DNA of 63,401 nt, filler included, from Octopus bimaculoides (Eukaryota), in the NCBI RefSeq assembly GCF_001194135.2. It is 6 parts of 6 records of this genome, joined end to end, with 100 filler letters (N's around TTAATTAATTAA, not from the genome) between each part and the next. Parts side by side here need not be neighbours in the genome. Positions count along the whole stretch, not along the records: positions 1 to 22,867 come from NC_068990.1; 5 more parts are not named here. One strand, given 5' to 3'. The notes beneath the pieces are model-generated. The model saw only the letters and a list, made by a program, of their open reading frames with translations, had not been told where the DNA came from and did no database searches. Both the position numbers and the translations under genes were made by a program. Position 1 is the first letter of the stretch. Every line of letters starts with the position of its first letter. Positions 1-23,090 of the stretch are shown in pieces.

Positions 1-109
1 GGGGGGGGGGGTCGATAAATTAAGTACCAGTTGCATACTGGGGTCGATCTAATTGACTGGCCCCCTAGAAAAGAATATTTTATTGAAGAGAAACTAGCTG
101 TTAATATTT

Positions 110-540
110 TGGCAAGCTGGCACGACAGGCAAAATGCTTAGCAGCATTTCATCTGTTTTCATGTTTTGAGTTCAAATTCTGCTAAGGCCGACTTCGCCTT
201 TCATCCTTTCAGGGTCGATAAAATAAGTACCAGTTAACACTGGAGTTGATGTAATCAACTCATTCCCTTCCCTTGAAATTGCTGGCCTTGTGCCAAAATT
301 TGAAATCAATATTTCCTACATTGTTAAGGCATCAAGCTGGCAGAATCATTAGTGTGTTGGGCAAAATGCTAATTAGCGTTTTGTTCGTCTTTATGTTCTG
401 GGTTCAAATTCCGCTGGGGTCAACTTTTCCTTTCATCCTTTCAGTGTTGATAAAATATGTACCAGTTTGACACTGGGGTTAATGTAATTGACTTGACCCA
501 TCTTCCAAAATTACCGGCTTTGTGTCAGAATTTGAAAACA
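110..540 (+). mobile_element. Two tandem family A tRNA-derived SINE copies (a further 3' part at 1-75)
   Basis: GCTGGCAGAATCATTAG head, GAGTTCAAATTC B-box-like motif, and core CCTTTCATCCTTTCAGGGTCGATAAAATAAGTACCAG repeated across the window. Confidence 0.8.
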
Positions 541-603
541 TTATTATTATTATTAATGTGCCTATGTAGAGATAGATAAACAGACTGACAGACATGCATC
601 TGA

Positions 604-650
<47 letters not shown>

Positions 651-660
651 NNNNNNNNNN

Positions 661-2322: not shown

Positions 2323-2663
2323 AACATTCATTAAATTTATCTAAGCTTGACTGAGCTCAGACAGAGGCAGCTTGGAAGTCACAGGATTTAGTAGTAATTT
2401 CTGATATAGACACAAGCCCTTGAATTTTGGATAGGAGTACTATTAAGTGACCTCTTCATTATGTGAGCCCTTCAATCCCCAATACTTGTACTTTATTTTA
2501 TTGACCCTAGAGGGATAAAAGGCAAAATGGGATTCATCTTAATTATTCTTCCATTGTTATCCTCTCATCTTGATTATCTAAAAGTGTTGTTACAAATTTG
2601 TTTCTATCCAGTCAGGTGACTTGCCCAGACCAATGCAACTCTTCCATGCCAAATGTCCCCATA

Positions 2664-3072
2664 GGCGCAGCAGTGGCTGTGTGGTAAGTAGCTTGCTTAC
2701 CAACCACATGGTTCCAGGTTCAGTCCCACTGCGTGGCACCTTGGGCAAGTGTCTTCTACTATAGCCTCGGGCCGACCAAAGCCTTGTGAGTGGATTTGGT
2801 AGACGGAAACTGAAAGAAGCTTGTCGTATATATGTATATGCATATATATATGTGTTTGTGTGTCTGTATTTGTCCCCCCAACATCGCTTGACAACCGATG
2901 CTGGTGTGTTTACGTCTCCGTAACTTAGCGGTTCGGCAAAAGAGACCGATAGAATAAGTACTAGGCTTACAAAGAATAAGTCCTGGGGTCGATTTGCTTG
3001 ACTAAAAGGCGGTGCTCCAGCATGGCTGCAGTCAAATGACTGAAACAAGTAAAAGAGTAAAAGAGTGAAAGA
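2664..3072 (+). mobile_element. Full-length family B SINE (tRNA head + CORE-like ACCTTGGGCAAGT segment), young copy
   Basis: Same sequence recurs at 4630-4865, 5089-5700, 10302-10492, 12191-12593(-), 14377-14757(-), 15385-15570, 19712-20290, 22611-22760, 37655-37803(-), 43680-44080(-), 44535-44900(-). Ends in a GTAAAAGA-type tail. Confidence 0.85.
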
Positions 3073-3669: not shown

Positions 3670-3723
3670 GATTATTAGATGTGGCTCGCAGGACTTACAC
3701 AGAAATTATTGATGATATTGCAG
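3670..3723 (+). CDS. MSH4: MSH4 internal exon (54 nt): (G)LLDVARRTYTEIIDDIA
   Basis: ttacag acceptor and GTAATT donor at 3724. Peptide matches the MSH4 motif LD.ARRTYTEI.DDIA. Phase 1 at both ends. Confidence 0.92.
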
Positions 3724-4207
3724 GTAATTAAAAACGTTTAAGAATACATTATCAAAATATCCCAACAAGATGTCTTCAACAAAACTTAAATAATAATTGT
3801 GTGTGTGTGTGTGTGTGTGTAAATTTATACAACATGAAGATGTAAAAAACAAGTTTTAATTGTAAATTACATCATTTGTTTCCACATCAGACACACCAGT
3901 TTTAAGTTACTGAGTTTTCATTCATGTACTATTACATAAAATTATTTTATAACATAATTACATAAATAAATATGATTCAGCAACAGCTGTGTGTCAGTTG
4001 TTCACCGGGTAGAATGGGTTTAAAGCATTATGTTATAAAATAATTTTATATAATAGTATATGAATGAGAACTCATATAGTAAGCTTTACTTTTGTTCTCC
4101 TAGGGATGATAAAATAAATCCAAGTGTGTACTGTTGTTTGGTTCAACCAACTCAATCAAATGTTTGGCCTTGTGCTAATCATAACAGCCCTTATTATATT
4201 TAATTAG

Positions 4208-4392
4208 AATTGGTTCGACAGTTATCAGAAAAGTATAAATTACCCTTAAAAACCAGCTACAATTCTACACGTGGTTTCTTCATGCAACTGTATTCTGGGA
4301 ACAAAGACAAATATATGGTTGATTCACTACCTTCGATCTTCATTAAAGTCGGCAAGCACAAAAATACTTTGAGTTTCACAACTACTGATCTT
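4208..4392 (+). CDS. MSH4: MSH4 internal exon (185 nt): (E)LVRQLSEKYKLPLKTSYNSTRGFFMQ...SIFIKVGKHKNTLSFTTTDL
   Basis: aattag acceptor and GTAAGT donor at 4393. Lies in ORF 4210..4473. Resembles MSH4 QL.EKY.LPL.TS....RGFF.Q and FT..DL. Confidence 0.93.
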
Positions 4393-4996
4393 GTAAGTCA
4401 TTGCACCATTTCTAAACTGCCATTGGACATTGTTTTTGTTTATGATAAAATCTTTTACTTGAAATATTGTTGAAGAATTATTATATTTGACGGCATGTAA
4501 GAAATATGTTTTATCAAAAAAAAAGTATCTCAAAAAATCATTTGTGTGTGATATTTATATATCCCAGCCCTGGTCAAAACGTCCCGCCCATGCCAGCATG
4601 GACAATGGACATTAAATGACGATGATGATGTGTGTGTTTTTGTGTTTGTGTTGTGTTTGTCCCTCGCCCCACTGTTTGAGAACTGGTATTGGTTTGTTTA
4701 TGTGACCATAATTTAGCAGTTTGGTAAAAGTGCCTGATAGGATATATATTAGACTTAAAAAATAAGTGCCAAGATCGATTTGTTCAACTAAACCTTTTAA
4801 GGAGGTACTCCAGCATGGTCAGAGTGCAATGATTGAAATAAGTAAAAGATAAATGATAAGATATAAAGGCATTTAGAACTTGTCTTTTCAGTTTTAATGT
4901 TCTTGTGAGAAAACAATTTGTTATTGATGTTATCAATAATTTTACAACTAAATTCTATATAAATATATTCATTTTATTTTATTTATTTTTTTGCAG

Positions 4997-5009
4997 ATAA
5001 AACTCAATG
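4997..5009 (+). CDS. MSH4: MSH4 13-nt microexon ATA AAA CTC AAT G: IKLN(D)
   Basis: Long T tract + TTGCAG acceptor and GTAAGT donor at 5010. Supplies the IK.N residues expected between DL and R..ESL. Converts phase 0 to phase 1 as the next exon requires. Confidence 0.88.
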
Positions 5010-5174
5010 GTAAGTCGTTTTCTTTTTCCCCATTAGTCAACTGGTACTCCACTAGGCAAGCTAAATGATTGCTTAAGGCACCAAAATAGGTGCAAGTGTG
5101 GCTGTGTTGTAAGAAGTTTGCTTTCCAACCACATGGTTCTGGGTTCAGTTCCACCATGTGGCACCTTCTATTAA

Positions 5175-5395
5175 CCCTTTTGTTACTGTATTTGTTTTGA
5201 GATGCTTTGTGTTTCTATCAATTAATTTTAAATATAGCAAAGAATTTAGTAAAATAACTTAGTTATCATTCAGCTAGTGTTAGGTACATAAATTGTGACT
5301 AAGGTTTGGTGGAAGATTTTAATTCAAAACTTATGAAACAAAACATTTGTACTACAGAGCTAGAGCTGGTTACAGCCGGATTGGTAACGAAAGGG
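5175..5395. mobile_element. piggyBac-like MITE (221 bp) inserted in a family B SINE
   Basis: TTAA on both sides (5171-5174, 5396-5399). Terminal inverted repeats CCCTTTTGTTAC / GTAACGAAAGGG. Confidence 0.8.
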
Positions 5396-6454
5396 TTAAA
5401 GCAGCCTCCTTGTGACTGGATTTGGTAAATGAAAACTGAAAGAAGCCTATTGTATATACATGTGTGTGTGTGTGTGTGTGTCTATGTGTCTGTGTCTGAC
5501 CCCCACCACTGCTTGACAACCAGTGTTGGTGTGTTTATGTCCCCATAGCTTAGCAGTTCAGCAAAAGAAACCAATGGAATAAGTACCAGGCTTAAGATGA
5601 AATAAGTACTGAGGTTAATTCACTCAACCAAAATTCCTCAAGTCAGTGTTTCTGCATAGCCACTGTCAAATGACTGAAACAAATAGAAGATAAACAAAGA
5701 TACCACACAAATTCTGAACAACATGAGTGAAATTTCTTAATCTAACTAAAGATACAAAATTTAGTAATAAATAAACAGGTGAGGTCACACCCAGAATAGA
5801 GGAGAATTGAGGCGAGAGAGAGCAGAATGGGGCAAAGGAAACAAGGGAATCGTGATATACAGGATTATAAATCTATAGATTTCTTGTTTGCAAATGAATT
5901 TTAATTTTCTACAGCATTTTTCAGTTGGTTTAAAGAAGTGTGTGGTTGGTGGAAGTTGCAGATTAAAATTGGAAAAGCAGGTGGTGCACATTGTCAAGTT
6001 GATAAAAAAAAAAGTGGGGGCACACATTATAAGAAAGACCAAAGGCATTGAATATCCTAGTCCTGGTCTTGTCACAAAGTATCAGATTCAGCCACAATCT
6101 CAATCTCTTCTTTATTTTATTATTATCACTAACTCTAATGTGGTGAGCTGGCAGAGCTGTTAGCATGCCAGACAAAATGCCAAGTGGCATTTCATTTGTC
6201 TGCATGTTCTGAGTTCAAATTTTACCGAGGTTGACTTTACCTTTCATCCTTTCAGGGTTGATAAAATAAATACTAGTTGAACACTGCGGCCAAAATGTCA
6301 GTCCTTGTGCCTCTAGTAGAAAGGGTTATGGTCACTGACTTTAAGGTAGCAAGTTATGAGAGTGGACAAAGTGCTTAGTGGCATTACTTCCAGCTCTTTA
6401 TGTTCTGAGTTCAAATACTGCTGATGTCAGTTTTGCCTTTCATCCTTTCAGAGT

Positions 6455-6768
6455 CATCTTCATCATCATCATCATTTAGCGCCTGTTGTCCATGCTGGCA
6501 TGGGTTGGATGGTTTGACTGGGTCTGGCTCGCCGGAAGGCTGTGCCAGGCTCCAGTCTGATTTGGCTTGTTTTTCTACAGCTTGATGTCCTTCCTAACAC
6601 CAACCACTCCAAGAATGCAATGGGTCCTTTTACGTGCCACCAACACAGGTACCATTTGCGTGACACTGGTATTTGCCATGACTGTGATTTTGCTTATCTT
6701 GATGGCTCTTCTCAAGCACGACATAATGCCAAAGGTCTTGGTCATTGCCTCTGTGAGGCCCAGCACTC
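6455..6768 (-). mobile_element. RTE LINE 3' terminal fragment inserted into a family A SINE (6340-6860)
   Basis: Reverse complement of the 3' end of the RTE at 46303-47730, including the GLTEAMT coding tail and (GAT)n end. SINE core resumes on the far side. Confidence 0.75.
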
Positions 6769-7221
6769 AATAAAATAAAATACTAGTTGAATACTGGGGT
6801 TGATGTAATCAACTTTCCTCTCCCATGAAAATATGTCACTTTGTGCCAAAATCAGAAAAGATTGTCACACATTCTAAGGTGACAAGCTGGTAGAACTGTT
6901 AGTGCACTGAACAAAATGGTAAGCAGCATTCCTTCAAGCTCTTTATCTTATTGAGGCTGACATTGCATTTCATCCTTTGGGTTTCAGTAAAATAAAGGGC
7001 CAGTTGAGCTCTGGGGCTGTAATTGACAAGACCCCTCATGCAAAATTTCAGTCCTTGTGCCTGCAGTGGAAAAAACAAAACAATTGTTGTTATTAGTAAG
7101 GTGGCAAACTGGCAAAATTGTTAGGAAGTTGGATGAAAATGCTTAGTGGTGGCAATGATGATACCCCTACATGGGCAAATTTGGAGAAGTTGGTGAGCTG
7201 CTAAATGATGATGATGATGTT

Positions 7222-8274
7222 AAACTGGGAAAAAACACTGCTGAAACTTATAAAATCCTCCAGACTGATTATGGATTAACTTGTGAATCAAGCATCTGCT
7301 TTTTACAGGCACAAAAGATCCAAGGACAATAGAAAGGAGGTGAGAGGTGTGAGGAGGACAGGGATGTCAGGACATCACAGATGGTTGAGAAAATTTGTAT
7401 TTTCTGGATGAAGACCATCATGTATCTATAGAGACAGTAAGCACAACAGTTTAGAGTTGGTGTGGCAACTGTACACAGAATTATTCAATAAGATCTGAAT
7501 ATGGGCAAAATTTGTGCAAAGTGTGTTCCCAGGTGCTCACTGACAAACAGAAGGAGAGATGCATTGGTGACAACAGGGAGATGGTTGAGCTCATTACCTC
7601 CAATCCAAGACTACTCTAGTCTCTGCTGACCTATGATGAAAGCTGGAGCTACTGTTACGATCCAGAGACCAAGAGGCAGCCTGACTAATGGAAGCATCCT
7701 GGCTCCCTCAGATCCAAGAAAGCCAGGCAAAGCAAGTCCACAGGGAAGTTTATGATGATTCCCTTGTTCAACAGCAAGGGAATAATTTACATCCACTGGG
7801 TTCCCTCTGACCAGATGGTCAACAAAGAGTACTTTGTGGAGGTTTTGAGGGAATTCCAGAAGGGATTTCGTCACAAAAGGCAGGAATTCTTCCACTCCAG
7901 TCAGTGACAACTGCACCAGTTTACAGTCCCATCTTGGTAAGCAACTGCTTGACAGAGATGAACATCAAAAGTGTCTCTTACCCTCCCTACTGTCCAGACC
8001 TTGCTCCCTGTGATGTTTGGTTATTCCACAAGCTGAAGGAGAACCTCAGGGGCAGTCAGTTTGAAGACATTGAGAAGATGAATGAGATTGTGACAAGGGT
8101 TGTGGATATCACCACTTTGGAGGACTTCTATGAGGCCTTCACAAAGTGGCTGGAATGCTACAGCAAATGCACTGAAGTTGGAGGATCCTACTTTGAAGAT
8201 TTGAGTTTTGTACTTCTTTGAACTTAATAAATGCCTCTCCTAAAAAAGTCTCAAAACTTTTGGAATGCACCTTG
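7222..8274 (+). mobile_element. 5'-truncated mariner (DD34D) transposon pseudogene with right TIR
   Basis: KLGKNTAETYKIL N-terminus, TYDESW, DN(fs)APV and YCPDLAPCD with 34 residues between D2 and D3. ORF 7904..8221. TIR AAAAAGTCTCAAAACTTTTGGAATGCACCTTG followed by TA. Stops and frameshifts present. Confidence 0.9.
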
Positions 8275-8620
8275 TATATACATGCAGAAAATGTGTATGG
8301 GATCTCCTCGCCCATCCTCTTAAAGGAGAGGCATGTTTTGACTGTACTAGATTATTGTAATCTTAGTTTATCATTACTACACATCTTATAAGCTGACTTC
8401 CCAACTTTTATTCCAGATTGAAGGAAATGCCTGTAATAGCACTATTAATATATTTTTTTAAAGGTGATTTAAATGTATTTCTTAACTGAATGAATTTCAT
8501 GACATGAGTTTGTGATGTTGGTGAACTGTTTCTTTCTTCCTTAAATATTGTTATCTATTGGTTAGCAAACTATTATATATTATATATTCCGGTTGTTCTG
8601 GTTTTTTTCCTTTTTCACAG

Positions 8621-8666
8621 ACCGTGTAAAAGAATCTCTCCAAGAAATTTACCTAATGACTAACAT
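8621..8666 (+). CDS. MSH4: MSH4 internal exon (46 nt): (D)RVKESLQEIYLMTN(I)
   Basis: tttttcacag acceptor and GTAAGT donor at 8667. Matches MSH4 R..ESL.EIY.MT. Confidence 0.92.
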
Positions 8667-8799
8667 GTAAGTTTTTTTAACGAAGTATTACAGAATTCCT
8701 CCTGTACTGATTTGACATTGATTTTCAAGAATTTAATTTACATGTATGGATTCCCAGAAACGGTTTATAGTTCCTGTTACCTATGTGGTTTAATGTTCA

Positions 8800-9020
8800 G
8801 TAGAGGTGGGTGGTGTGAATGCATAGCAGCTTGAGAAAGTCCAGAGAGCTGACAACAGAGGATATTTTCTTTCTGGGTGAAGGGTTGTTAGTCTGAGGCT
8901 TTGTATACAAAATGAGATGTTATATGGTCGGGGAACTTAAAAATTGAATGTGGAGGATGTATTAAATGAAGGTTAGAAAGAAATGAGATGAACATGCTCC
9001 ATCGGATGTGGAATATTCAT
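8800..9020 (+). mobile_element. Old RTE LINE RT C-terminal fragment
   Basis: CIQNEMLYG and ERNEMNMLHRMWN resemble AMLHGSETW and NEASMLHWMCN in the 46303 element. Confidence 0.6.
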
Positions 9021-10580
9021 CCTTTAACTGTAAGGCAGTGAGCTGGCAGAATCATTAGTATGCCAGGCAAAATGCTTAGCAGCATTTCTTCCGTCTTTAT
9101 GTTCTCAGTTCAAATTCTGCCAAGGTCAACTTTGCCTTTCATTCTTCCAGAGTTGATAAAATAAATACCAGTTGAGCCCTGAGATTGATGTAATCTACTT
9201 AGCCTCTCTCCCAAAATTGTTGGTCCTGTGCTAAAATTTGAAAGCAATATTAACCCTTTAACTGCATGCAGAATTAAGTTTCATGGTTATTCCAGTAAGG
9301 ATGTTAAAAGATCTACCAAAAAAATAGAATTGGTATTTTCTGCTTCGGTAAACTTGACACACCTCAACAAAAAATAGTTTCAAACATGACTGTGCTTTTT
9401 ATGTGGCACCATCACTAATTTGCTTCTTATTCCTGTGTATGAGGAAAATATTTTTTTACTTTAAAGTAGGGCGTCTGGCCATAGAAAAATCAGCCTCAAT
9501 AAATCCCATCCAAGGATGGAAAAGTGGACATTAAAATGATGACAGCAGCAGCAGCTGTTATTGTAGATGGTGGTGGTGGTAGTGAGGGCAGTGGCAAGGA
9601 TGATGATCTTGACAACATGATCATAATGATGATGAGGATGAACTGTATAATTTTATTTAATTCTTTTGTTAAGGTTCACTTATTGAAGTGAATATATGTT
9701 GTAAGTGAGTCATTAAGTTTAGGACTTTATAATTTCCTTCACATTAGCAGATTTTAATTTTAACTTACATTTTGTTTATGTATACTCAAGAGTGTTTAGG
9801 TATGGTTTCAGATTTCAAAGTCAAGTGGTTGCTAGTGAAACCATCTGACTGTAAATGCTTCAGTGATACGCTACACTGGTATACACAGATATTAATTTAG
9901 GTAAAATGGCCATTAAATTGAAGATTTGATCATATATTTAGAAACTAGATTACTTTAATGTTTTACAGTGTATCATTGCAGAATATTTTAATAAGTTTTT
10001 TTATTTTATTATTTAGATTTAAAAGTATAACAGAAGTCATGGTTCATATTTTATAATTTTAGAATACAAAAAAAAATAAATTTAAGTTTATTTCCTCATG
10101 ATGCATTGTAATGAAGCATTGCTTATTTTAAACCACTTGGTTTTACTTTAACCCTTTTGCCAGGGACAAAATAACCTTTCTAGTGCTTGTGCCATGATGA
10201 AATGCACTCACTATACTCTATAAAATGGTTGGTGATAGGAAGAGTATCCAGCTGTTGAAACTATGGTAGGAATGGAGCATGCGAGTAAGGCATGATCCTT
10301 GATCTGTCCTCCATCACCACTAGACAATCAGTATTGTTTTGTTTATGTCCCTGTATTATAGCAGCATAGCAGTTTGGCAAAAAGAGATCAATAAAATAAG
10401 TACCAGAGTTGATGTGTTTGACTAAAGCTATCAAGGTAGTGCTTCAGCATGGCCACAGTCTAATGACTGAATTGAATATAAGATACAAGATATATATTTT
10501 GGAAAATATTTTTTTAATTATTTGATGTAACCTATATGTAATTTGAGACTGTAAATTAATGTAATTAATTTCTTTTTCAG

Positions 10581-10705
10581 TGTTGTTACTGAGCTTCTCA
10601 ATGACATCAGGAGCTGTATTAGTTGTTTGTACAAACTCTCAGAGTGTGTTTCCACGTTAGACATGCTGGCAGGATTTGCACATCTTTGCACATTATCGGA
10701 TTATA
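10581..10705 (+). CDS. MSH4: MSH4 internal exon (125 nt): VVTELLNDIRSCISCLYKLSECVSTLDMLAGFAHLCTLSDY
   Basis: tctttttcag acceptor and GTAAGT donor at 10706. Matches MSH4 CLYKLS..VS.LDML..FAH.CTLSDY. Confidence 0.94.
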
Positions 10706-10764
10706 GTAAGTGTATTACCATTCTGCCTTTCGTACTTGGGGAGCGGGGTGGGAGTTGGTGGGGG

Positions 10765-10960
10765 GTCATCATCATAATCACCACCATTTAATGTTCACTT
10801 TCTGTGCTGACATGGGTTGGATGGTTTGACCGGAGCTGGCAAACCAGATGACTGCACCAACGTCCACTATCTACTTTGGCAAGATTTCTTTGGCTTGATG
10901 CCTTTCCTAACACCAACCACTTGGCACAATGTACTGGGAGCTTTTTACATGGCAACCATT
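10765..10960 (-). mobile_element. RTE-type 3' tail fragment
   Basis: CATCATCAT...CATGGGTTGGATGGTTTGACC...CCTAACACCAACCAC, as in the 6455 and 48505 copies. Confidence 0.65.
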
Positions 10961-11210
10961 ATCCATTGTTGATGTAATTATAAAGCAAAACTGACATTGC
11001 ATTTTTCTAGGCTAGGATTATAGGTGCCAGAAATATGGTATATCTACAAGTCTTTTGGCAGTAAAAAGTATATCTTGGTCTCATTGACTGGTCCATTTGA
11101 AAGGATATAAACTAACAAAGTGGCTCCATTTGGCCAATTTCAGTTTTGAAATTTCCTCCAATGAAGAGAGAAATTGTAGTATTTACTATATGGCATCTGA
11201 ACTCCATTTC

Positions 11211-11282
<72 letters not shown>

Positions 11283-12665
11283 ACAGACACACACACACAC
11301 ACACACAGAGAGGAAAAAACAAACCAACCTCTCACGATAATGCCTCATATTTACTCCTCAGTGAATTGATTGGTTACTAGGGACAATGACAGGGAGTCTC
11401 CTCCTATATTTAACATCTTCCCATTTGCACCTGTCAAACAGGTGCTTCACTAATGGAATGCTATGTTTTATTTATTTATCTATTTATTTATTTATCCTTT
11501 TAGAAAAAAAACAATCACAAAACTCTTGCAAAATAAGCACAAACATTCAATTCGTGTTTAGACTGTCTAATTTGCAACAAACACTACTTTATTAAAAATG
11601 ACTTATTTATAAGCTTAATTATGTGGGAGAGGGAGGGGGAACATCACTACCACTGCCAACAACAACAACAACAGAACTTGGGGTAAAGATATTTCAGCCA
11701 ACTTTAGACTATTTAATTACATTTGATAATTATTTTGTGGGTGGGAGTAATTAAGATAAATGAATAAATAAAATTCTGCTGATGCCTGTTAAGATTCCTA
11801 ATGAATTTCTAAAAAAATCTAACGTCAAGGTTCTTGGAGATGAACAACAGGAATATTTATAATAAAACCATATTTGATTTTAATTAAAACATTTAGTTCT
11901 ATTTTTTACCTTCCTTCCTAATAAAAGCTTTCAGAATTTTATTATTCTCCATTTCTTAGTATTTTCTGTGAAATTTATTGATAAGAGAAAAGTTATTGGT
12001 GATGGCCAATAATATTATTTCTTACTTATCATTGACGGAACAATACTAAATAGCTTTCCAAATTCAAGGGCCACATTGAATGGGGAGACATAAGAGGCAC
12101 AGGGCCTGATTTCACTGGAATCTTTTGATTTCTGAAATTGTAAGAGTTCTGAAGAACTGTGGTTCTCTGTTGCATGATTCCTCAGTCTGTTATCTTTTAT
12201 CTTTTACCTGTTTCAGTCAGACGATGTGGCCATGCTGGGGCACTACCTTAAAAGATTTTTAGTTGAATGTATTGACGCCAGCACTCTTTTTCTTTCTTTT
12301 TTAAAGCCTGGTACTTATTCTGTTGGTTTTGTTTTGTTGAACTGCTAAGTTATGGGGATGTAAACACACCAATACCGGTTGTAAAGTGGTGGTGGTGGTT
12401 GGGGACAAACATGCATTAACATACACACAATACACAACAGGATTTCAGTTTCTGTCTACACCAAATGCACTCACAAGGTTTTTGTTGGCCCAAGGCTATA
12501 GTAGACGACATTTGCCCAAAGTGTCACAGAATTGACACTTTGGAACCATGTGGTTGGGATGCAGACTTCTTACCACACAGCCATGCCTGAACCTAACTTC
12601 TTACCACAAGATATGCAACTGAGTTTTCCCTCTCAACATTTTATTTTTCATTGAGAAAATTTCAC

Positions 12666-12714
<49 letters not shown>

Positions 12715-13169
12715 TGCCCTTATGTACAACTTAAGTGTGTTTACATACAACGTTGTTTGACAGTTTGAAAGCATCTCTGACAATCTTCAAGCAATAAAAT
12801 TGTCTCAGAAGTTTACATACTTCAAATATTAAATGATTATGTCTTCAAAGATATTTGGAGAGCAGCAGGTGCTTCCAATTGAAAAAAAATCAGCATCTTA
12901 CGTTACATCTACAAGTAGCAACTGATTTACCTTTTGATAATAAAACTGATTGTTGTTATTGTTGTTGTTGTAAAGGCAGCAAATTGTTACTGCTTTGGAC
13001 AATGCTTAACAGCATTTTTTCCAACTCTATGTTATAAGTTCAAATGCCACCAAGGTTGACTTTGCTTTTCATCCTTTAGGATGAAGTAAGTACCAGTTAA
13101 ATATTGAGGTCAATGTTATCCAATATTCTTCTATCAACAATTTTCAGGTTTTGTGCTTATAATATAAAG

Positions 13170-13696
13170 GATTATTATTATTATTTATTGTTGTTGTTGT
13201 TGCTATTATTATTATTGTTCAGTAGTTTTATTTTTATAACGTGCTTTCACTTCACTACCGAGCACAGCTCTGTGTACCTTGGGTATGTGCTGTGGTTTGC
13301 TGTGATGCTCTTATGGTTACTGTATTGAAAGTGTTTTGCGTAGGATGTGTACAGTGCCCAGTAGTGCAATTTTATGTATGTTATATATATTTGTAAGTCC
13401 TGGTGCTTTTGTTATGTATTTGTCTGAATATTTTTTTTATTATACCTAAGGTACCTACTATGATAGGAATTGTTTCTGTATTTAGATTCCACATTCGAGT
13501 TACCTCTATTTCCAGGTCTTTGTATTTTGAAAGTTTCTCCATTTTTTTTAGGGAAACGTTGTCATCTGCTGGTATTGATACATCAATTAGAAAGCATTTT
13601 TTTCCTTCATGATCTTTGACAACTATATCTGGTCTATTAGCCTTAATTTCTCTATCTGTGTGTATTGGCATATCCCAGAGTATGGTTGCTTTCTCG

Positions 13697-13705
<9 letters not shown>
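13170..13705 (-). mobile_element. 3' end of an RLE-type (R4/Dong-like) non-LTR retrotransposon
   Basis: ILWDMPIHTDREIKANRPDIVVKD...FLIDVSIP...KLSKYKDLEIEVTRMW is a restriction-like endonuclease domain (ORF 13381..13671). Followed by KIALLGT.HILRKTLS, a short UTR and an (AAT)n tail. Confidence 0.85.
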
Positions 13706-13761
<56 letters not shown>

Positions 13762-15596
13762 GTTTGACTTTTGATTTGTATTTGTACAAGTTGGCTCCAA
13801 GTTTCATCCAGTGACCTCAAGAGATAACAAGTTAGAAGAATCTAACGCGCTTTTCATACTTTGCTATGCAGGCAGCTTTAACACATAATTGTTAATGTAA
13901 ATGACTTACCCTCTACCCCAAAATTGCTGGTTTTTGTGCCAAAATTTGAAATCAATATTTAATTCTATCCTTCCACATTCTGAGCTCATTTCTTACTAGA
14001 AATCCTCCTCCTTTTATCCTCATAGGATTTACAAGATCAATACCTGATTTGTGCAGGGGTTTGGTTGATTCAGCTAAATTTCTCATAATATAGTGTCAAT
14101 GTAGATTAAAAAAGTAGTTGTTTGTTTCACACATTGCCCCAGATAGGAAATAACCAGAACAAGTAAAAGCATGTCTAATCTTTTTTTTAATGTCTTATTG
14201 CTATTATATTGCTTTTGTAATCCTACTTTGTCATGCTTGGATGCACAGCAATTAGTCATTGAAGAATTACTGCTCCTATTTTTAGTTAATGGCCATTTAA
14301 TTTCAGTGACTTGGAAAGTCACAGAGATTATGATTACATCTAAAATATATCAATTGCTTATGTTATTTTTTTCTGTTTTACATGTTTCTGTCATTAGGCT
14401 GTGGCCATGCTGGGGCACTGCCTTGAAGAAACTTAAGCCAAGAAATCGACCCCAGTACTTGTCTTTTAAAGCCTGGCACTTATTTTAAAGGTCTGTTTTG
14501 CTGAACCACTAAGTTATAGGGACATGAACATACTAACACCGGTTGTCAAGCAATGGTGGGGGACAAATAGACACAAAACACACACACATGCATGCACGCA
14601 AACATACATGTGTACGTGCACACACACACACAACATACACACACACACACAACACACACACAATACGCACAGACACACACATGAGGTTCAGTGGGGCTGA
14701 ACCTGAAACCATGTGCTTGGGAAGCAAACTCCTTACCACACAGCCATGCCTATGCCTAAGAATACAAGATGTTCACAGACAGGATGTTATTGGTCATAGG
14801 CTTGTCCAGTCAAAGCTGGCCTTGGGCTAAACAACACCAACCCACCATCAGATAAATAACTTTGTTTGACTATGAAGAATTTCACATCAAGAAGCTTATT
14901 ATGAAATGTTCAATAGTAATTGACTAAAACCGGTAATTGAAGAATTGAAAACTCAGTATTTTTTATCCCCAAAATATCTTATATTCTTAAATGCCTGTTA
15001 AGCTGAGTCTGTGATCCTGTTTCCACCCATCGATGATAGAATTTCTCTTACCTTACAATATTACTGAGAAAGGTGTAAATGTTGCTTAACTTATTCTTTT
15101 CTGTTACAAAACAGTTTACCTTGTAGCTACATAAAGAATTGATATTTTTGGCTACATACTTTATGCTATTTCTAAATGGTTAGAAATAAAACTCATAGAA
15201 ATATCTAGAAATGTTTACTTAATAATTTATTCTTGTTGAAGAGTGAATAGATATTTAATCTCTTATTAGTCATGAAAGTAATAATTGATATGTTTGTGTA
15301 TTCCTACGGAAATGACTAAATTAAGAAACTAAAGGTTTAATGTTTGTTTTGCTTTTTGTTTGTGTGTTTGGGTGAAAGGTTTTGGCTCAGGTGTGGCAGT
15401 GTAGTCAGTAAATTCGCTTCCAAACCACATGGTTTCAAGTTCAGTCCCACTACATGGCACCATGAGCAACTGTTTTCTGCTGTAGTTCCAGGCAAAGCAA
15501 ACCTTGTGAGTAAATTTGGTAGATGAAAATAGAAAGGCATCCATATTACACACACACATACACATAACCCATGCCAGTGTGGACAACAGACATTAA

Positions 15597-15628
<32 letters not shown>

Positions 15629-16639
15629 ATATATTAATTTAAGTTTTTGTGTTCTGTTATAACAAAAACAATTTCAGGTTTATCTGGTGGGTTACTCCAA
15701 GTACAAATTTATTATCATTAAACAGGAATATTGACAGTGACTTCTAAAGTTTTGGCCAGTTAAAGCCATCTACTCTTGGTTTTATATTGTCTCTATTGAG
15801 TTAGAAGTGTTTTGGATAAATTTTTATTGATTAAATTTGGGGTTATGTTCTTGCCTAGAATTTATTGGTGTACATAGAACTTCATAAGCAAGTGTATATA
15901 TATTTAGGTGTGTCTCTTTTGTTAGGTAGGCACAGAATGTGTCAGTAGTTTTAGTTATTTTTAGTTTTATTGGATTTAATCTTTTGTTTTAACAATGTAA
16001 AGGTCAAAGGTACAAAGTTGAGTATTTAAAACTTAGTAATTAGGTGTGTCAACTTTTTCATAATGGAAGTTTTTAGGGGTTCACAAAAGAATGTAAATAG
16101 GTTGTATGTTTTAGCTGGTCAGTTTCTTCACTTGTTCCTATTTAAGTATTTCCTGTTTTCATTTCGAAGGTAGGAGTCATCAGTCAGGCATCCCATGGTG
16201 TTGTTGGCATAGAAAATTATTCCTTTTGTGTTTTGATGTTCACAAAAGGATTTGGGTAGTTGTAAAAGTTTGTTTCTCTCTGGGTGTTAATTTGATTAGT
16301 ATATAGAGATTTTAACTTTCGTGTTTTATGGAGGTAGAATTTGTGGGCTGTGTGCTTATAAATATTTCTTGGCATACTCTCAAATAATGCTACTCCAGGA
16401 ATCCTATGGAACAACCCTATTCCAGTGGCTTGTATTTACAGTCATATTGTTTTCGTTATTACCTGACTAATATAATAAAAAAATTCTCCACAGAACTTGG
16501 TAGAGTCACCTACACTCCAAGTGTTGGTTATCATAGATGATGACGAGTATAACTGGAGTACAACACCCCCACATATGAAGGGAAGCTGAAAAGTTCCTGG
16601 CTTTGGGTAGCAGGAAATATGAGAGAACTAGTGGAATGT

Positions 16640-17057
16640 TAAAAGCACCATCTGAGCGTGATGGCTCCCATGCTGGTGGCACGTAAAAAGCACCATTCGA
16701 GCATGATCATTACCAGCATCACCTTACTGGCACATGTGCCGGTGGCATGTGGAAAACAACATTTAAGTGTGGCCGCTGCCAGTGCCGCTGGACTGGCTCC
16801 TATGCAGGTAGCACATAAAAAAAACCTTTTGAGCATGGTCGTTGCCAGTACCACCTGACTGGCCCTCGAGCCGGTGGCATGTAAAAGCACCCACTACACT
16901 CTTGGAGTGGTCGGCGTTAGGCAGAACATACAGCTGTTGAAACTTTGCCAGATCAGATTGAGCCTTGTGCAGCCTTCTGGCTCGCCAGTCCTCAGTCAAA
17001 TCGTCCGACCCATGCCAGCATGGAAAGCGGACGTTAAACGATGACGACGATGATGAT
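16640..17057 (+). mobile_element. RTE LINE 3' UTR fragment with internal tandem repeats
   Basis: Repeated GGCACGTAAAAAGCACCATTCGAGC units and terminal CATGCCAGCATGGAAAGCGGACGTTAAACGATGA, matching 47300-47730. Confidence 0.8.
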
Positions 17058-17908
17058 AATTTTATTGAACATATTCCCTTCTCAGATTCACACACTTATT
17101 GCAGCAGTCCATCAGTTTTTCTAAGCCCTGTAAAAGAACTCTTAAGGTTAGGCCTCCAACCAGACCTTTCACAATACTTTTAAAGCCGGGAACTTTTCAG
17201 CACCACCTCATATAAAGTTATAAGAATTCTTATTTATTTGTTTATATTTAATGATTCAGAAATGATTCTATCTTCATTATTTTCTATTTATGTGGACTAT
17301 TGTACTGTCTACAAAACATTTTATTGAACGTTTCAAATTGGATGTTATCATTCCATTTCCTGGATGCCAAGTTGAGCATCTGGACAGGAAATATAGATGT
17401 CTTAATGCTTGTAGTTATTGTTATGAAATTTCAAACTTGTATGGGCACATTTTAAATTCATTAATTACATTGGCAAGAACACGCACACACACACACACAC
17501 ACACACTCTGTCTCTCCTGATTTGCAAAAGTGTATTTGAAATCTGAGGAGTCAAAGGATTCCATGAATTGTAACTTTGAGTTTGTGGCTCCAAAGAAGCT
17601 CCTACATAGTTCCTTGAACCTCTCGGTGTCTCATGCATGTTTATTGCAACAAACTATATTATTAAATGGGATCCATATGTTTAACCCTTTTGATAACAGC
17701 TGTTTCCTTAATAAACAAATCACCTATATCATTGCCTTCATTGCTTTAACTTTACACAGATAACTGCTCACACACACACACACACACACACACAGTGTGC
17801 CAAACACTTAACTCTTTTGTTACTGTTTAAATACACTGATTTTGTTTCATAGAAAAATATTATTTGTAAATCTCTCAATGAGAGATATTCAGTAACAGTA
17901 CTCTAGAG

Positions 17909-18100
17909 TAAAGATTATTTGCCAACACATCATGGCAGTCGTGGTTAGGAAGAATGTTACTGTTTTTTAGCTCGAGGAAACAGCGTCTCCAGCTGGCTAG
18001 TGTGTTGTATAGCCAGCTGGAGATGATATTTTCTAGAGCTAAATAACAGTAACATTCTTCCTAACCAGGACTGCCACAGTATGTTGGCAAATAATTTTTA
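17909..18100. repeat. ~190-bp imperfect palindromic (hairpin) element
   Basis: Left arm TTATTTGCCAACA...GGTTAGGAAGAATGTTACTGTT...TCTCCAGCTGGCTA is the reverse complement of the right arm. Loop is about 10 nt. Confidence 0.8.
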
Positions 18101-18635
18101 CAATTTTGTTTCAATTAATTTGGAAAATAACAAAGAATTTATAAGAATATATTTGTCATAATGGAGCTAGTATTTCAAAAATAAATAGAATTTTGACAGA
18201 AGGTTTTTATTTAGATAACTGTAAAACAGAGACTTTCTATTGAAACTAGATGTGGTCTTATGCAGGCTGGAACCAAAAGGGTCAAAGAGCCTGTGGCTAG
18301 GAAACCTTGTGACTCTTCCAAAACAGTCACAGAAGTCTAGAACAGGCTTCAGCCTGGCCAGCTTTTGTGGTACTGTGCCACCCATGCTAGCATGGAACAC
18401 AGATGTTAAATGATGATGATGAAGATGATGACATTTTACCATACAAGTGAAACTTGATGTTTTTGAGGCCTAGGAATCACCTGTTGATGCTTATTGACAA
18501 TATATTGGTGCTATACATAACTACAGCACATTGACAATTAAGAAAACTTCAATCGTTTTTATTTATTGTACAACTTAAACATTTTATGTTTCTCTTTCTT
18601 AATTTTTCTTATTCATGCTCAATATTCCATTTCAG

Positions 18636-18730
18636 CTCGTCCAGAATTTACAGACACTGTTGCCATTAAGCAAAGCCGACATCCCATTTTGGAAAAAATT
18701 GCAAGGGAGCCTCCTGTTCCAAACAATACT
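18636..18730 (+). CDS. MSH4: MSH4 internal exon (95 nt): (T)[31 protein letters not shown]
   Basis: catttcag acceptor and GTAAAT donor at 18731. Start of the MutS ATPase domain (RPEFTDT.AIKQ..HPILEKI). Lies in ORF 18566..18781. Confidence 0.94.
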
Positions 18731-19270
18731 GTAAATATACTTTTAACTATTCTAATAAGCGAAAAATATTCCTTATTTTAATGGGTGAGCTGAACTTCTT
18801 AAGAACTTGGTTGGATCCGCCTAGCTATCTGATTTTTAAAAGATCTTCTTATATTTTTTATAATTAAATATTATTATGAAATGTGTAAAAATAATTATTA
18901 AAAATTTTCTATGTATTGTAGAAGTATAACCAATTTATTGCAGAAAAATTTTAACAATAAAATCTTATATGGACCCTGCTTTAGATGGTAGGAGAATGAA
19001 ATACATTTAAAATTTTCTCAAACAATAAACAAAATTAAATAGTTTCAGCTAGGATTTGAAACTGTATCACAAAATCATTCACTGTGAGATTACTTATTGT
19101 CCTATAGTTTATAACAATATTCATTTATCTCATTTTTATGAAAGTATTTTCGTATAATATTCAAAGTGGCAACTGTTTCAAGTGTCAGAATGTCGAAATA
19201 GAACTTTAAGATATTAATAAAAATCCTTTCCTTTTTTTACTCTGAAAAAATTTCCACACAATAGTTTTAA

Positions 19271-19511
19271 CCCTCTCAGACCTGGCCCACTGTGTTTAAC
19301 TTTACCCTTCATCTGTCACACCAGTTTAAAAAGCCTACCTGTTTTGTGCTCAAACTAGTCAGATCCAGCCTCTCACACCTACCCTATGATATTCTAAAAA
19401 TAAGCAATGACGTCTTTGAAATACCAAAGCCACTTGACAAGGCCTGATTAATTCCAAACACCATGTATAAATAAGCATTGACTTTGACAGAGGAATCTGA
19501 ATTCTAAAGGG
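19271..19511. mobile_element. Second piggyBac-like MITE family
   Basis: Flanked by TTAA (19267-19270, 19512-19515) with CCCT...AAAGGG termini. Left TIR is degenerate. Confidence 0.6.
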
Positions 19512-19864
19512 TTAAGATCATGTCAATGACTATTTCGAGTTCAGTAAACTCCTTCTTATTTGGTACCACTGGCATTGGGGGGTTGTCAGATAACTGAATG
19601 TTTTAGATATCTGATTACTTTTAAAATTACCACAGCACCTTGCTAAACTCATTAAATCTCTCTCTATATATATATATACATCAATACTATCATTAATATT
19701 CTGAATATAGATGCAGGTATGGCTGTGTGGTTAGAAGCTCATTCCCAACTGCATAGTTCAGGGTTCAGTCCCACTGCGTGGCACCATGGGCAAGCGTCTT
19801 CTACTATAGCCTTGGGCTGACCAATGCCTTGTGAGTGGATTTGGTAGACAGAAACTGAAAGAAG

Positions 19865-20077
19865 GCAGCGAGCTGGCAGAAACGTTAGCATGCCGCGCAA
19901 AATGCTTAGTGGTATTTTGTCTGCCGATTCCACCGAGGTCGACTTTGCCTTTCATCCTTTCGGGGTCGATAAATAAAGTACCAGTTATGCACTGGGATCG
20001 ATGTAATCGACTTAATCCCTTTGTCTGTCCTTGTTTGTCCTCTCTATGTTTAGCCCCTTGTGGGCAATAAAGGAATA
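19865..20077 (+). mobile_element. Young family A SINE inserted in a family B SINE, 15-bp TSD
   Basis: AGAAACTGAAAGAAG at 19850-19864 and 20078-20092. Family B sequence continues on both sides. Confidence 0.88.
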
Positions 20078-21787
20078 AGAAACTGAAAGAAGCCTGTTGT
20101 ATGTGTATGTGTGTTTGTCCCCCCCCCTCACTGCTTGACAACTGGTGTTGGTTTGTTTACGTCCCTGTAACTTAGTGGTTCTGCAAAAGAATAAGTACTG
20201 CGGTTGATACATTCAATTAAAAATTCTTGAAGGAGGTGCCCCAGCACGGCCACAGTCTAACCAAATGAAACTAATAAAAGATAAAAGATAACAGATAGTA
20301 AAAATGAGAGAAATAGGAAGGCATAAAAATATGACTTATGTAAAGAACAAGCTTTAGTAACCTAATGAAATATAGGTACTCTAAGTGCCACAAAATAATA
20401 TACTGTACTATACTTTGGGAAGCAACAGTCATAAAATTTCTTTTAATGATAAGTGATTAATTAACACAAATTAGCACACATTCTTTTGACTCTAATTAGC
20501 ATTTTCTTTAATTTGTTTCTGGTTGCTGATTGTTTGAGTTCCTGTTATTTAAGTAGCAGATAAGAAGGAGTCCACTGTATATTTAATCTGTGAGTCTATA
20601 GACAAAGCATATAGCATTAGTTTGAAACAGTTTTATGAAATTTTAATAAGTAGGAGAAGGTAAATGTTGTTTAAAAAAAACAAATAAGAATAAATAAAAA
20701 AAAAAGCGGTTGATAAATCTAACAGAAAAACAATTCTCATTAATCATTAAATACCATAGAGTTATTTAAACATTCCATGCATATTTATAGAAGTAGTAGA
20801 ACCTGATTTGGTTTTGAAAAATTGCAGAAGTGAAAAGCAACAGAAATTTGACAAACACTACAGAAAAAGTGGTAGCTATATGAGGTTAATCAAAACAATT
20901 TTTTTTTTTTTTTTGGCAGCTTGTTTTTTCTTTTTTTCTAATATGGGTTTGATTTTCCTGCAAAGTTTTGTATTTGCATTGATACTTTTCTTTTGATAGC
21001 AACTTAATTTTGATTAATTGATATATTGCAGACTATTTATTAAAAATATATCTTCTGTAACATATGCATACATGTGTGTATGTTTGTTTGTGTGTTTATG
21101 TCTTTTGTCTTATGTCAGTGAAGGTTGTATATAGAATCAAAAAACAGCACTCTTCAAATAAAATTCTTCAAGTTATAGATGCTTGTCTGTCATTCTTTCC
21201 ACCACGAATGCAAAACCACCAGAAACTGGAAGGCGGCGAGCTGGCAGAAACGTTAGCACACTGGACGGAATGCTTAGCAGTATTTTGTCTGCCGTTACGT
21301 TCTGAGTTCAAATTCCACTGAGGTCGGCTTTGCCTTTCATCCATTTGGGGTCAGTGAAATAAATACCAGTTACTCACTTGGGTTTATGTAATTGACTAGC
21401 CTCCTCCCCCAAATTTCAGGCCTTGTGCCTTTAGTAGAAAGGGTTTTTTATTATTGACTAAAGCACTTTTTGTTGCATTCGGAGTCCAAATTCCGCCAAG
21501 GTCACTTTCACCTTTCATGGTCAATAAATTAAGTACCAGTGAAACACTAGGGTCAATGTAATCAACTATTCCCCTCCACCAAATTTCAGGCCTTAGGCTT
21601 CCAGGTGAAAGGATTATTATTATTGTTATTGTCATTATGTTGATACTATCAGATCTTAATATTTAAATCAAATTTTTTGTAATTTAGTACTTACATAATA
21701 TCTTGTAACATATTCATATTTTATACATAGTATATTTTATTATCAGGAAATAACTTAATCATTCTTTTGTTTTTGTTTTTTTTTCAG

Positions 21788-21835
21788 TATGCTTCTAATG
21801 ACAGCAATTTTATTATTATTACAGGACCAAATATG
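21788..21835 (+). CDS. MSH4: MSH4 internal exon (48 nt): YASNDSNFIIITGPNM (first half of Walker A)
   Basis: Long T tract + CAG acceptor and GTAAGT donor at 21836. IITGPNM is the MutS P-loop prefix. Confidence 0.93.
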
Positions 21836-22813
21836 GTAAGTATTAAACGCTCATTCAATAATATTTGGAAAAAATAATTTGATCTAAAGATAAAAATCCT
21901 ATTAAAATCTGTTTGTAAACTTTACAGGATACTCTTAGTTAAGAAACACTCTACTAAAGTCATGTTCTAAGACAGATTAGTCTTAATCTGTTTTTCTTTA
22001 TGAACAGCATATTCTTCTGAAATGGTTCTTCAAAATCAGGAGTAAAGTATTCATTTGTGACCATTTCTGCTTTTGTCAAAAGACTCTCCCTCTCTCTCTC
22101 TCTCAGACACTCACATACACAAGCACACACAAATTCTTGCTCTCTCTCTCTTTCACACTCACACACACACACACATACACAAATTCTCTCTCTCCTTCTC
22201 TCTCATATGCACACACACACACACACACTCTCTCTCTCTCTCTCTCTCCACGCACACACATATACACATTGTTATAAAATACATTGACGTTAAATATATA
22301 GATGTATGTTGAAAAGCGACCATATATATAGCCTTCATTTTCTGTCATATTCTGAAAGAAGATCAACTTTTATTATTCACATTATTGTGCTGGACAAAAT
22401 GTTTATTTCTTCCAGCTCTTTAAGTTCTGGGTCCAAAAGCCACTGAGGTCAAATTTATTTTTCATCCTTTTGGGGTCAACAAAATAAGTACCAGTTGAGC
22501 ACTGGGGTGCTATCAACTAGCTCCCTCCTCACAAAATTCCAGGCCGTGTGCCTATAGTAGAAATAGTAGAAAGAATTACTCATTGATATTTTAAATCTTG
22601 AACATACGTAGGTGCAGGTATGGCTGTGTAGTAAGAAGTATGCTTCTCAACCCCATAGTTCTGGGTTCAGTCCCACTACATGGCACCTTGGGCGAGTGTC
22701 TTCTAGCCACTCATTCGTGAGTGTATTTGATAGACAGACACTGAAAGAAGCCCAACACACACACACACACACTCACTCATGTGAATGCTGCCTGAAGGAT
22801 GACTTCAAGGCTA

Positions 22814-22849
<36 letters not shown>

Positions 22850-22867
22850 TGTATATATATATTAAAG

Positions 22868-22967
22868 NNNNNNNNNNNNNNNNNNNNNNNNNNNNNNNNN
22901 NNNNNNNNNNNTTAATTAATTAANNNNNNNNNNNNNNNNNNNNNNNNNNNNNNNNNNNNNNNNNNNN
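22868..22967. other. Artificial scaffold join: 44 N + TTAATTAATTAA + 44 N
   Basis: Identical 100-bp spacer with a six-frame-stop core, found five times in the window. Confidence 0.95.
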
Positions 22968-23029
22968 GTGTGTGTGTGTGTGTGTCTGTGTAAATATTTA
23001 TATACATATATACATATATATATATACAT

Positions 23030-23090
<61 letters not shown>

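What the first reader, a model, noticed from the sequence alone, without database searches (positions are those of the whole stretch)
4997..5009. 13-nt frame-setting microexon in MSH4
ATAAAACTCAATG sits between a strong T-rich acceptor and a consensus GTAAGT donor and encodes IKLN(D). Without it, exon 4208-4392 joined to 8621 reads CTT ACC GTG TAA, an immediate stop upstream of the ATPase domain. A microexon that is not a multiple of 3 is uncommon, invisible to ORF finders, and could act as a splicing on/off switch (skip, then NMD) restricting MSH4 to meiotic cells. The regulatory role is inference. It lies between SINE copies at 4630-4865 and 5089-5700.
Basis: partly seen in the sequence, partly recalled or inferred. 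Interest (0 to 1): 0.75.

Follow-up and report, generated by a model that had tools for sequence, protein, structure and literature searches.

The report
Conserved 13-base coding microexon in MSH4
The 13-base stretch is a real coding exon of an octopus MSH4 (meiotic recombination) gene, kept at the same size and position in molluscs and a tick, but nothing shows that it works as a splicing on/off switch.

Summary
Observation confirmed. ATAAAACTCAATG at 4997-5009 lies between a T-rich acceptor (AG 4995-4996) and a GTAAGT donor (5010-5015). It joins exon 4208-4392 to exon 8621-8666 in frame as TTTDL-IKLN-DRVKESL. Skipping it gives TTTDLTV*.

It is a genuine exon.
- The joined peptide aligns without gaps to bacterial MutS and to seven MSH4 relatives, two of them (P0001, P0003) on 1.1-1.3 kb contigs; a separate tblastn shows the intron-free contig L005 encoding TTTDLIKLNDR.
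- A 13-nt exon in the same phase sits between the same flanking exons in Octopus vulgaris (identical), a cuttlefish (one synonymous change), a clam (IKYN), a snail (IQQN, GC donor) and a tick (IKMN).
- In a blastn against the cuttlefish interval, the only colinear matches with E below 1e-4 are the microexon and its two flanking exons.

A bird has these codons inside one larger exon, and banana splits them elsewhere. The split therefore dates at least to the protostome ancestor and is not universal.

Public models already contain the exon (O. vulgaris, Physella, Amblyomma). Others break or skip at this spot (clam, cuttlefish, spider).

The NMD-switch idea has no support here: no RNA data, strong splice sites, and no extended intronic conservation. 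This is an ordinary constitutive-type microexon of low novelty.

The parts
3670..3723 (+). MSH4 exon, 54 nt, encoding (G)LLDVARRTYTEIIDDIA(E)
   Evidence: Flanked by AG and GT. Same length and flanks in O. vulgaris and cuttlefish. Matches MSH4 relatives.
4208..4392 (+). MSH4 exon, 185 nt (MutS domain IV), ending ...TLSFTTTDL in phase 0
   Evidence: Pfam MutS_IV. Orthologous exon of identical length in O. vulgaris and cuttlefish.
4975..4996 (+). Pyrimidine-rich tract (16 of 20) plus acceptor AG of the microexon
   Evidence: The tract and AG fall inside the only conserved intronic island shared with cuttlefish (4978-5015).
4997..5009 (+). 13-nt coding microexon ATAAAACTCAATG. It encodes I-K-L-N plus the first base of the Asp codon.
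   Evidence: Restores the frame. Ungapped alignment to MutS and MSH4. Orthologous 13-nt exons in five other genomes. Raises the Pfam MutS_IV score from 44.2 to 49.7 bits.
5010..5015 (+). Consensus donor GTAAGT of the microexon
   Evidence: GTAAGT also in O. vulgaris and cuttlefish, GTAGCT in clam, GCAAGT in Physella, GTAAAA in tick.
8621..8666 (+). MSH4 exon, 46 nt, encoding (D)RVKESLQEIYLMTN(I)
   Evidence: The first two bases, AC, complete the Asp codon begun by the microexon. Same length in O. vulgaris and cuttlefish.
10581..10705 (+). MSH4 exon, 125 nt, encoding [41 protein letters not shown]
18636..18730 (+). MSH4 exon, 95 nt, encoding (T)[31 protein letters not shown]
21788..21835 (+). 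MSH4 exon, 48 nt, encoding YASNDSNFIIITGPNM (start of the Walker A motif)
5087..5600 (+). SINE copy with a tRNA-like head, 78 nt downstream of the microexon donor. It is an intronic repeat and not part of the exon.
   Evidence: Repeat families D4, D10 and D5

Best explanation
The 13 nt at 4997-5009 are an ordinary, obligatory coding exon of a cephalopod MSH4 gene. The window is an Octopus species close to, but not the same as, O. vulgaris.

The exon supplies Ile-Lys-Leu-Asn and the first base of an Asp codon, at the point where MutS domain IV (the clamp) returns into the long helix of domain III. Two introns, one in phase 0 before Ile and one in phase 1 inside the Asp codon, isolate these 13 nt.

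This arrangement is inherited. It is present with the same size and phase in cephalopods, a bivalve, a gastropod and a tick, so it dates at least to the protostome ancestor. A bird has neither intron.

The exon is most likely recognised constitutively through its strong pyrimidine tract and consensus donor. This step is inferred, not shown. Skipping would truncate the protein before the ATPase domain, so inclusion is required for any functional MSH4.
For: 1. Frame. Inclusion gives an open frame and skipping gives TV*.

2. Protein fit. The 189-aa peptide joined from seven exons aligns without gaps across the microexon to bacterial MutS: ftttdliklndrvkes against fitpelkafedkvlta and yiipelkeyedkvlts. 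It also aligns without gaps to the seven MSH4 relatives of alignment A1. Six of them span these four codons, reading LRMN, IKMN, IKLN, IQAD, TCLN and LQLN. Pfam MutS_IV scores 49.7 bits with IKLN and 44.2 bits without it.

3. Spliced-message evidence from relatives. The 866-bp contig L005 encodes ...FTTTDLIKLNDRTRESL... without interruption across five exon junctions. P0001 and P0003 lie on 1.1-1.3 kb contigs and behave likewise.

4. Orthologous 13-nt exons between the same flanking exons.
- O. vulgaris L001:25620-25632, identical sequence.
- Cuttlefish L002:29197-29209, ATAAAACTTAATG, one synonymous change.
- Clam L003:8424-8436, ATAAAGTATAATG, encoding IKYN.
- Physella L006:1939-1951, ATTCAACAAAATG, encoding IQQN, with a GC donor.
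- Tick L008:8849-8861, ATCAAGATGAATG, encoding IKMN.

5. Search made without specifying the exon. A blastn of window 4100-8800 against 9.1 kb of the cuttlefish gene gives, among colinear matches with E below 1e-4, only the upstream exon, the microexon with about 20 nt on each side (E 2e-5), and the downstream exon.

6. Selection on the gene. All seven exons have identical lengths and AG/GT flanks in three cephalopods. Exon identity to O. vulgaris is 97.5%, against 86-93% in the introns.

7. Public models of O. vulgaris (P0002), Physella (P0016) and Amblyomma (P0032) contain the exon's residues.
Against: No transcript from the window's own species could be examined. Inclusion in its mRNA, and whether inclusion is constitutive, are inferred from homology and conservation.

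The O. vulgaris model that contains the microexon joins it directly to the exon four positions downstream. It skips 46 + 125 = 171 nt in frame. This could be a real isoform or an annotation artefact, and it shows that the public models here are not fully reliable.

The clam donor (GTAGCT) and the tick acceptor (ccaAG) are weaker than the octopus sites.
Confidence: 0.9

Rival explanations
1. One reading: the microexon is a regulated switch. In somatic cells it is skipped, the frameshift creates a stop in the next exon, and NMD removes the message. Productive MSH4 mRNA is then confined to meiotic cells.
For: Skipping does create a premature stop well upstream of later exon junctions, so a skipped transcript would be a plausible NMD target. 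The 13-nt size, not a multiple of 3, has been held for a very long time in protostomes. Such conservation could reflect function beyond coding. One public model shows unusual splicing around this exon (P0002).
Against: There are no expression or junction data.
- The acceptor tract and the GTAAGT donor are strong, as reported for constitutively spliced microexons (introduction of PMC8831610).
- Octopus-cuttlefish conservation stops about 19 nt upstream and 6 nt downstream of the exon, with no extended intronic block of the kind that accompanies regulated microexons.
- A bird has the same codons inside a normal exon. From general knowledge, vertebrate MSH4 is still gonad-restricted, so restriction does not need this exon.
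- Conserved intron positions need no regulatory explanation.
Confidence: 0.07
2. The 13 nt are not an exon. The match is chance, and the frame is restored by other splice sites or by a different small exon in the 4.2-kb interval.
For: The interval contains 342 AG-N(1 mod 3, up to 61 nt)-GT candidates, of which 222 are open. A frame-restoring candidate would therefore exist by chance.
Against: Only this candidate encodes the family-conserved residues, against 0.027 expected by chance. It is conserved in five other genomes with synonymous or conservative changes only. It is the only intronic stretch in this interval that gives a colinear match with E below 1e-4 to cuttlefish. Homologues need exactly four residues plus a split codon here.
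Confidence: 0.01
3. The locus is a decaying MSH4 pseudogene, and the apparent microexon is a relic.
For: The introns are crowded with SINEs and a mariner remnant. Only part of the gene lies in the window.
Against: All seven exons are open, keep their splice sites and have lengths identical to two other cephalopods. Exons are 97.5% identical to O. vulgaris while introns are 86-93% identical, which indicates purifying selection.
Confidence: 0.02

Closest known systems
Conserved ultra-short coding microexons (15 nt or less), as catalogued in plants (Yu et al. 2022, PMC8831610)
   Same: Very short internal coding exon lying inside a conserved protein domain. Size and phase are conserved over very long times. 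The length is not a multiple of three, so missing it frameshifts the model. It is often missed or mis-modelled by annotation. Here the clam, cuttlefish and spider models break or skip at this spot.
   Different: This is an animal gene (MSH4) and was not part of that catalogue. I searched only for papers holding both 'MSH4' and 'microexon'; there were none. In the one plant examined (banana), the MSH4 exon boundary lies two codons away and there is no 13-nt exon.
Neural and tissue-regulated animal microexons (3-27 nt; Irimia et al. 2014, cited from my own knowledge)
   Same: Tiny exon flanked by strong splice signals in an animal gene.
   Different: Those exons are mostly multiples of 3, alternatively included, and flanked by long, highly conserved intronic sequence. 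This one is 13 nt, appears obligatory for the reading frame, and has almost no conserved intronic flank.
Alternative splicing coupled to NMD (unproductive splicing by skipping an essential exon; from my own knowledge)
   Same: Skipping would give a frameshift and a premature stop upstream of many exon junctions.
   Different: No alternative isoform has been observed. This is true of any exon whose length is not a multiple of 3, so by itself it is not evidence of regulation.
Vertebrate MSH4 gene structure (bird Pterocles gutturalis locus L007)
   Same: The same protein segment...[27 protein letters not shown]. The intron after ...MTY(L) is at the same position and phase as the octopus intron after 8666.
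   Different: There are no introns on either side of IKMN, so the codons are part of one exon of about 90-100 nt. Instead there is an intron about 14 codons upstream, inside what is the 185-nt exon in octopus.

Membership tests
MSH4 (MutS homologue 4) gene | Encodes MutS domains III/IV/V in order | tested here: met
   Pfam MutS_IV at 4.5e-13 and the tail of MutS_III (E 5.8e-4, 20.7 bits, below Pfam's 34.1-bit cut-off) on the joined peptide. The peptide ends in ITGPNM, the start of the Walker A motif of MutS_V.
MSH4 (MutS homologue 4) gene | Closest relatives are MSH4 rather than MSH2/3/5/6 or bacterial MutS | tested here: met
   The named top hits are MSH4 or 'mutS protein homolog 4' at 41-97% identity: O. 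vulgaris, Acanthosepion, Physella, and JGI-named MSH4. PDB MutS, MSH3 and MSH2 reach only E 1e-11 to 3e-8.
MSH4 (MutS homologue 4) gene | Lacks the N-terminal mismatch-binding domain I; meiotic expression | not testable with these tools
   The 5' part of the gene lies outside the window, and no expression data are available.
Conserved constitutive coding microexon | Canonical splice signals directly flanking the short segment | tested here: met
   AG at 4995-4996 after a tract with 16 of 20 pyrimidines, and GTAAGT at 5010-5015.
Conserved constitutive coding microexon | Inclusion is required for the frame, and the encoded residues match intron-free relatives without a gap | tested here: met
   cDNA-like contig L005 reads TTTDLIKLNDR.
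Conserved constitutive coding microexon | Same size, phase and position in orthologous genes of distant species | tested here: met
   13 nt in the same phase in O. vulgaris, cuttlefish, clam, snail and tick. Absent in bird and banana.
Conserved constitutive coding microexon | Junction reads or cDNA from the same species showing inclusion in most transcripts | not testable with these tools
   No octopus transcript data could be reached.
Regulated NMD-coupled splicing switch | Two isoforms (included and skipped) observed, with tissue-dependent ratios | not testable with these tools
   No RNA data.
Regulated NMD-coupled splicing switch | Extended conserved intronic sequence around the regulated exon | tested here: not met
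   Octopus-cuttlefish similarity is confined to 4978-5015, which is the exon plus its splice signals. The multi-species alignment shows conservation only at the exon and its splice sites.

The most novel reading that the evidence does not exclude
In cephalopods, and perhaps protostomes generally, inclusion of the 13-nt exon is regulated. Skipping outside the germ line would send MSH4 transcripts to NMD, making an ancient microexon a post-transcriptional gate on a meiosis gene. My data neither show nor exclude this.
Probability: 0.07. Interest if true: 0.5.

Novelty: already known. Interest (0 to 1): 0.18.

Why it matters
The main value is practical. A 13-nt exon that sets the reading frame explains why MSH4 models in several invertebrate genomes are wrong at this spot.
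- The clam Tegillarca gene is split into two models.
- The cuttlefish model skips the exon.
- The spider model lacks the residues of the 185-nt exon and the microexon, which keeps the frame.

Knowing the conserved 'tag' would let annotators repair these models. The tag is ...FTTxD[LMV] | [I][KQ][LMYQ]N + G | (A[CTA]) R..ESL...

There is also a small evolutionary point. The same 13-nt exon, with the same phase, is shared by molluscs and a chelicerate but is fused into a larger exon in a bird. It is thus a clean example of deep conservation of intron positions in protostomes, with intron loss or rearrangement elsewhere.

It does not change the understanding of MSH4 function, and the exon is already present in some public gene models.

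Tried and rejected
- An 81-aa query spanning the microexon found nothing in the word-indexed protein search. The longer 189-aa query and a profile worked.
It was not run.
- The PDB holds no MSH4 chain that matched. Only MutS, MSH2, MSH3 and MutS2 matched. The short-query PDB hits were coiled-coil noise.
- A first regular expression for the microexon missed the clam because its third residue is Tyr. A scan of all AG-Nk-G[TC] candidates found it.
- The spider protein P0053 was not on record for a locus look-up. The spider microexon is only inferred from the in-frame gap in its model.
- A literature search for MSH4 plus microexon returned no paper.
- I considered and rejected these readings: another frame-restoring exon in the intron, a pseudogene, and the same microexon in plants.

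Full report
**What is in the sequence**

The window's + strand carries the middle part of an MSH4 gene. By eye and by translation I mapped seven exons: 3670-3723 (54 nt), 4208-4392 (185), 4997-5009 (13), 8621-8666 (46), 10581-10705 (125), 18636-18730 (95) and 21788-21835 (48). Each is flanked by AG and GT.

Joined, they give a 189-aa peptide: GLLDVARRTYTEIIDDIAELVRQ...TLSFTTTDL-IKLN-DRVKESLQEIYLMTN-IVVTELL...ITGPNM.

The finding's coordinates are exact.
- ATAAAACTCAATG follows tattttatttatttttttgcAG, with 16 of 20 pyrimidines before the AG.
- It is followed by GTAAGT.
- With the 13 nt included, the frame stays open.
- Without them, the junction reads CTT ACC GTG TAA.

**Is it more than chance?**

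The interval 4393-8620 holds 19 AG-N13-GT candidates. Across all lengths equal to 1 mod 3 up to 61 nt it holds 342 candidates, 222 of them open. A frame-restoring candidate alone therefore means little.

Only 4997-5009 encodes residues compatible with the MSH4 family. Even with a permissive motif chosen after seeing the data, Markov simulations expect 0.027 such candidates per interval.

**Protein evidence**

- Pfam finds MutS domain IV across the junction. The first, 81-aa query gave 6.6e-9.
- On the full joined peptide the score is 49.7 bits, against 44.2 bits if IKLN is deleted.
- Solved bacterial MutS structures align without gaps through the microexon: ftttdliklndrvkes against fitpelkafedkvlta and yiipelkeyedkvlts.
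- The seven MSH4 relatives of alignment A1 also align without a gap here. Six span these four codons, reading LRMN, IKMN, IKLN, IQAD, TCLN and LQLN.
- Further relatives recovered by the profile search, read by eye rather than aligned, show the same kind of motif, for example IKLN, VKKN and VKRN.
- One relative, the 866-bp contig L005, encodes FTTTDLIKLNDRTRESL with no intron across five octopus exon junctions. It is therefore message-derived or from an intron-poor genome.

**Orthologous DNA**

Loci fetched through the hits show a 13-nt exon in the same phase, between the same two flanking exons, in five further genomes.

| Species | Locus and position | Sequence | Peptide | Flanking signals |
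|---|---|---|---|---|
| Octopus vulgaris | L001:25620-25632 | identical | IKLN | AG / GTAAGT |
| Cuttlefish Acanthosepion pharaonis | L002:29197-29209 | ATAAAACTTAATG (one synonymous change) | IKLN | AG / GTAAGT |
| Clam Tegillarca granosa | L003:8424-8436 | ATAAAGTATAATG | IKYN | ttttcAG / GTAGCT |
| Snail Physella acuta | L006:1939-1951 | ATTCAACAAAATG | IQQN | AG / GCAAGT |
| Tick Amblyomma americanum | L008:8849-8861 | ATCAAGATGAATG | IKMN | AG / GTAAAA |

A blastn of window 4100-8800 against 9.1 kb of the cuttlefish gene was run without specifying the exon. Among colinear matches with E below 1e-4 it returned only three islands: the 185-nt exon, 4978-5015 (the microexon plus splice signals; 84.6% over 39 nt; E 2e-5), and the 46-nt exon.

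All seven exons keep identical lengths in the three cephalopods. Exon identity to O. vulgaris is 97.5%, against 86-93% in the introns. The gene is therefore under purifying selection. The window comes from an Octopus species other than O. vulgaris.

**Where the arrangement is absent**

- In the bird Pterocles gutturalis, [28 protein letters not shown] is one uninterrupted stretch of DNA. There is an intron about 14 codons upstream instead.
- An unidentified eukaryote on a metagenome contig (L004) has the upstream exon and IRLN fused. It keeps a 59-nt GT...AG intron exactly at AATG|AT, the microexon's 3' boundary.
- Banana MSH4 has its boundary two codons away, at ELAS|LNVRN.

The microexon therefore results from two old introns. 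It is shared at least by molluscs and chelicerates, and it is not universal. Whether vertebrates lost the introns or protostomes gained the upstream one is not settled.

**Annotation status**

Public models of O. vulgaris (P0002...TTVDLIKLN-ARPEFT), Physella (P0016) and Amblyomma (P0032) already contain the exon's residues. The O. vulgaris model then skips the next two exons, 171 nt in frame.

Other models fail at exactly this spot.
- The clam gene is split into two models, L003:1-9929 and L003:10001 onward.
- The cuttlefish model skips the microexon and several exons upstream of it.
- The spider model lacks the 66 residues that the 185-nt exon plus the microexon (198 nt, in frame) encode in octopus.

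This is the behaviour described for ultra-short plant microexons, about half of which are not multiples of three (PMC8831610). No paper in the library mentions MSH4 together with a microexon.

**How it most likely works**

Shown: the 13 nt are coding, they are required for the frame, and they are conserved.

Inferred: the exon is spliced constitutively, helped by its strong acceptor tract and consensus donor. The encoded I-K-L-N-(D) lies where the clamp domain returns to the long helix of domain III, by alignment to MutS.

- Any exon whose length is not a multiple of 3 would give a premature stop if skipped.
- No isoform data exist here.
- No extended intronic conservation surrounds the exon.
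- The bird gene does without the split.

I give the switch idea about 7%.

**Verdict**

The exon is real and deeply conserved in protostomes, and the regulatory interpretation is unsupported.

It is an ordinary member of a known kind, a conserved constitutive coding microexon. It is already present in some public gene models, so novelty and interest are low. The useful by-product is an explanation, and a sequence tag, for recurrent MSH4 mis-annotation in invertebrate genomes.

Noticed in passing
window 2662-2975, 5087-5600, 15383-15540, 19707-20191, 22609-22705; partial copy at 4663-4732: A SINE family with a tRNA-like head (GGCTGTGTGGTAAG...GGTTCAGTCCCAC) and a (TG)n-containing body is scattered through the MSH4 introns. 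One copy starts 78 nt after the microexon donor.
   Followed up: partly
window 93-546, 6136-6456, 9031-9252, 19927-20018, 21229-21618, 22405-22528: A second interspersed repeat family (repeat finder D1-D3 and D7; core ...CCTTTCATCCTTTCAGGGTCGATAAAATAAGTACCAGTT...) has seven or more copies, including a tandem pair at 93-546.
   Followed up: no
window 7689-7904 (and the ORF at 7811-8218): A mariner-type transposase remnant (Pfam Transposase_1, E 3.2e-8) lies in the intron between the microexon and the next exon. The reading frame is broken across several frames.
   Followed up: partly
L003:1-9929 and 10001-23265 (Tegillarca granosa); P0008 (cuttlefish); P0053 (spider); P0002 (O. vulgaris): Public MSH4 gene models are split or skip exons at the microexon. 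The clam gene is two models. The cuttlefish model jumps from an upstream exon (...IHEDTKY) to the exon after the microexon. The spider model lacks the residues of the 185-nt exon plus the microexon, in frame. The O. vulgaris model keeps the microexon but skips the next 171 nt.
   Followed up: partly
L006:1952-1957 (Physella acuta): The snail's orthologous microexon uses a GC donor (G|GCAAGT) instead of GT.
   Followed up: no
window 17908-18101: A near-perfect hairpin lies in the long intron: 92-nt arms, 87% complementary, 10-nt spacer. It looks like a MITE or foldback element.
   Followed up: no
window 16662-16882: Three tandem copies of a 66-nt unit lie in the intron.
   Followed up: no
window 651-660: A run of 10 N, which is an assembly gap.
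   Followed up: no
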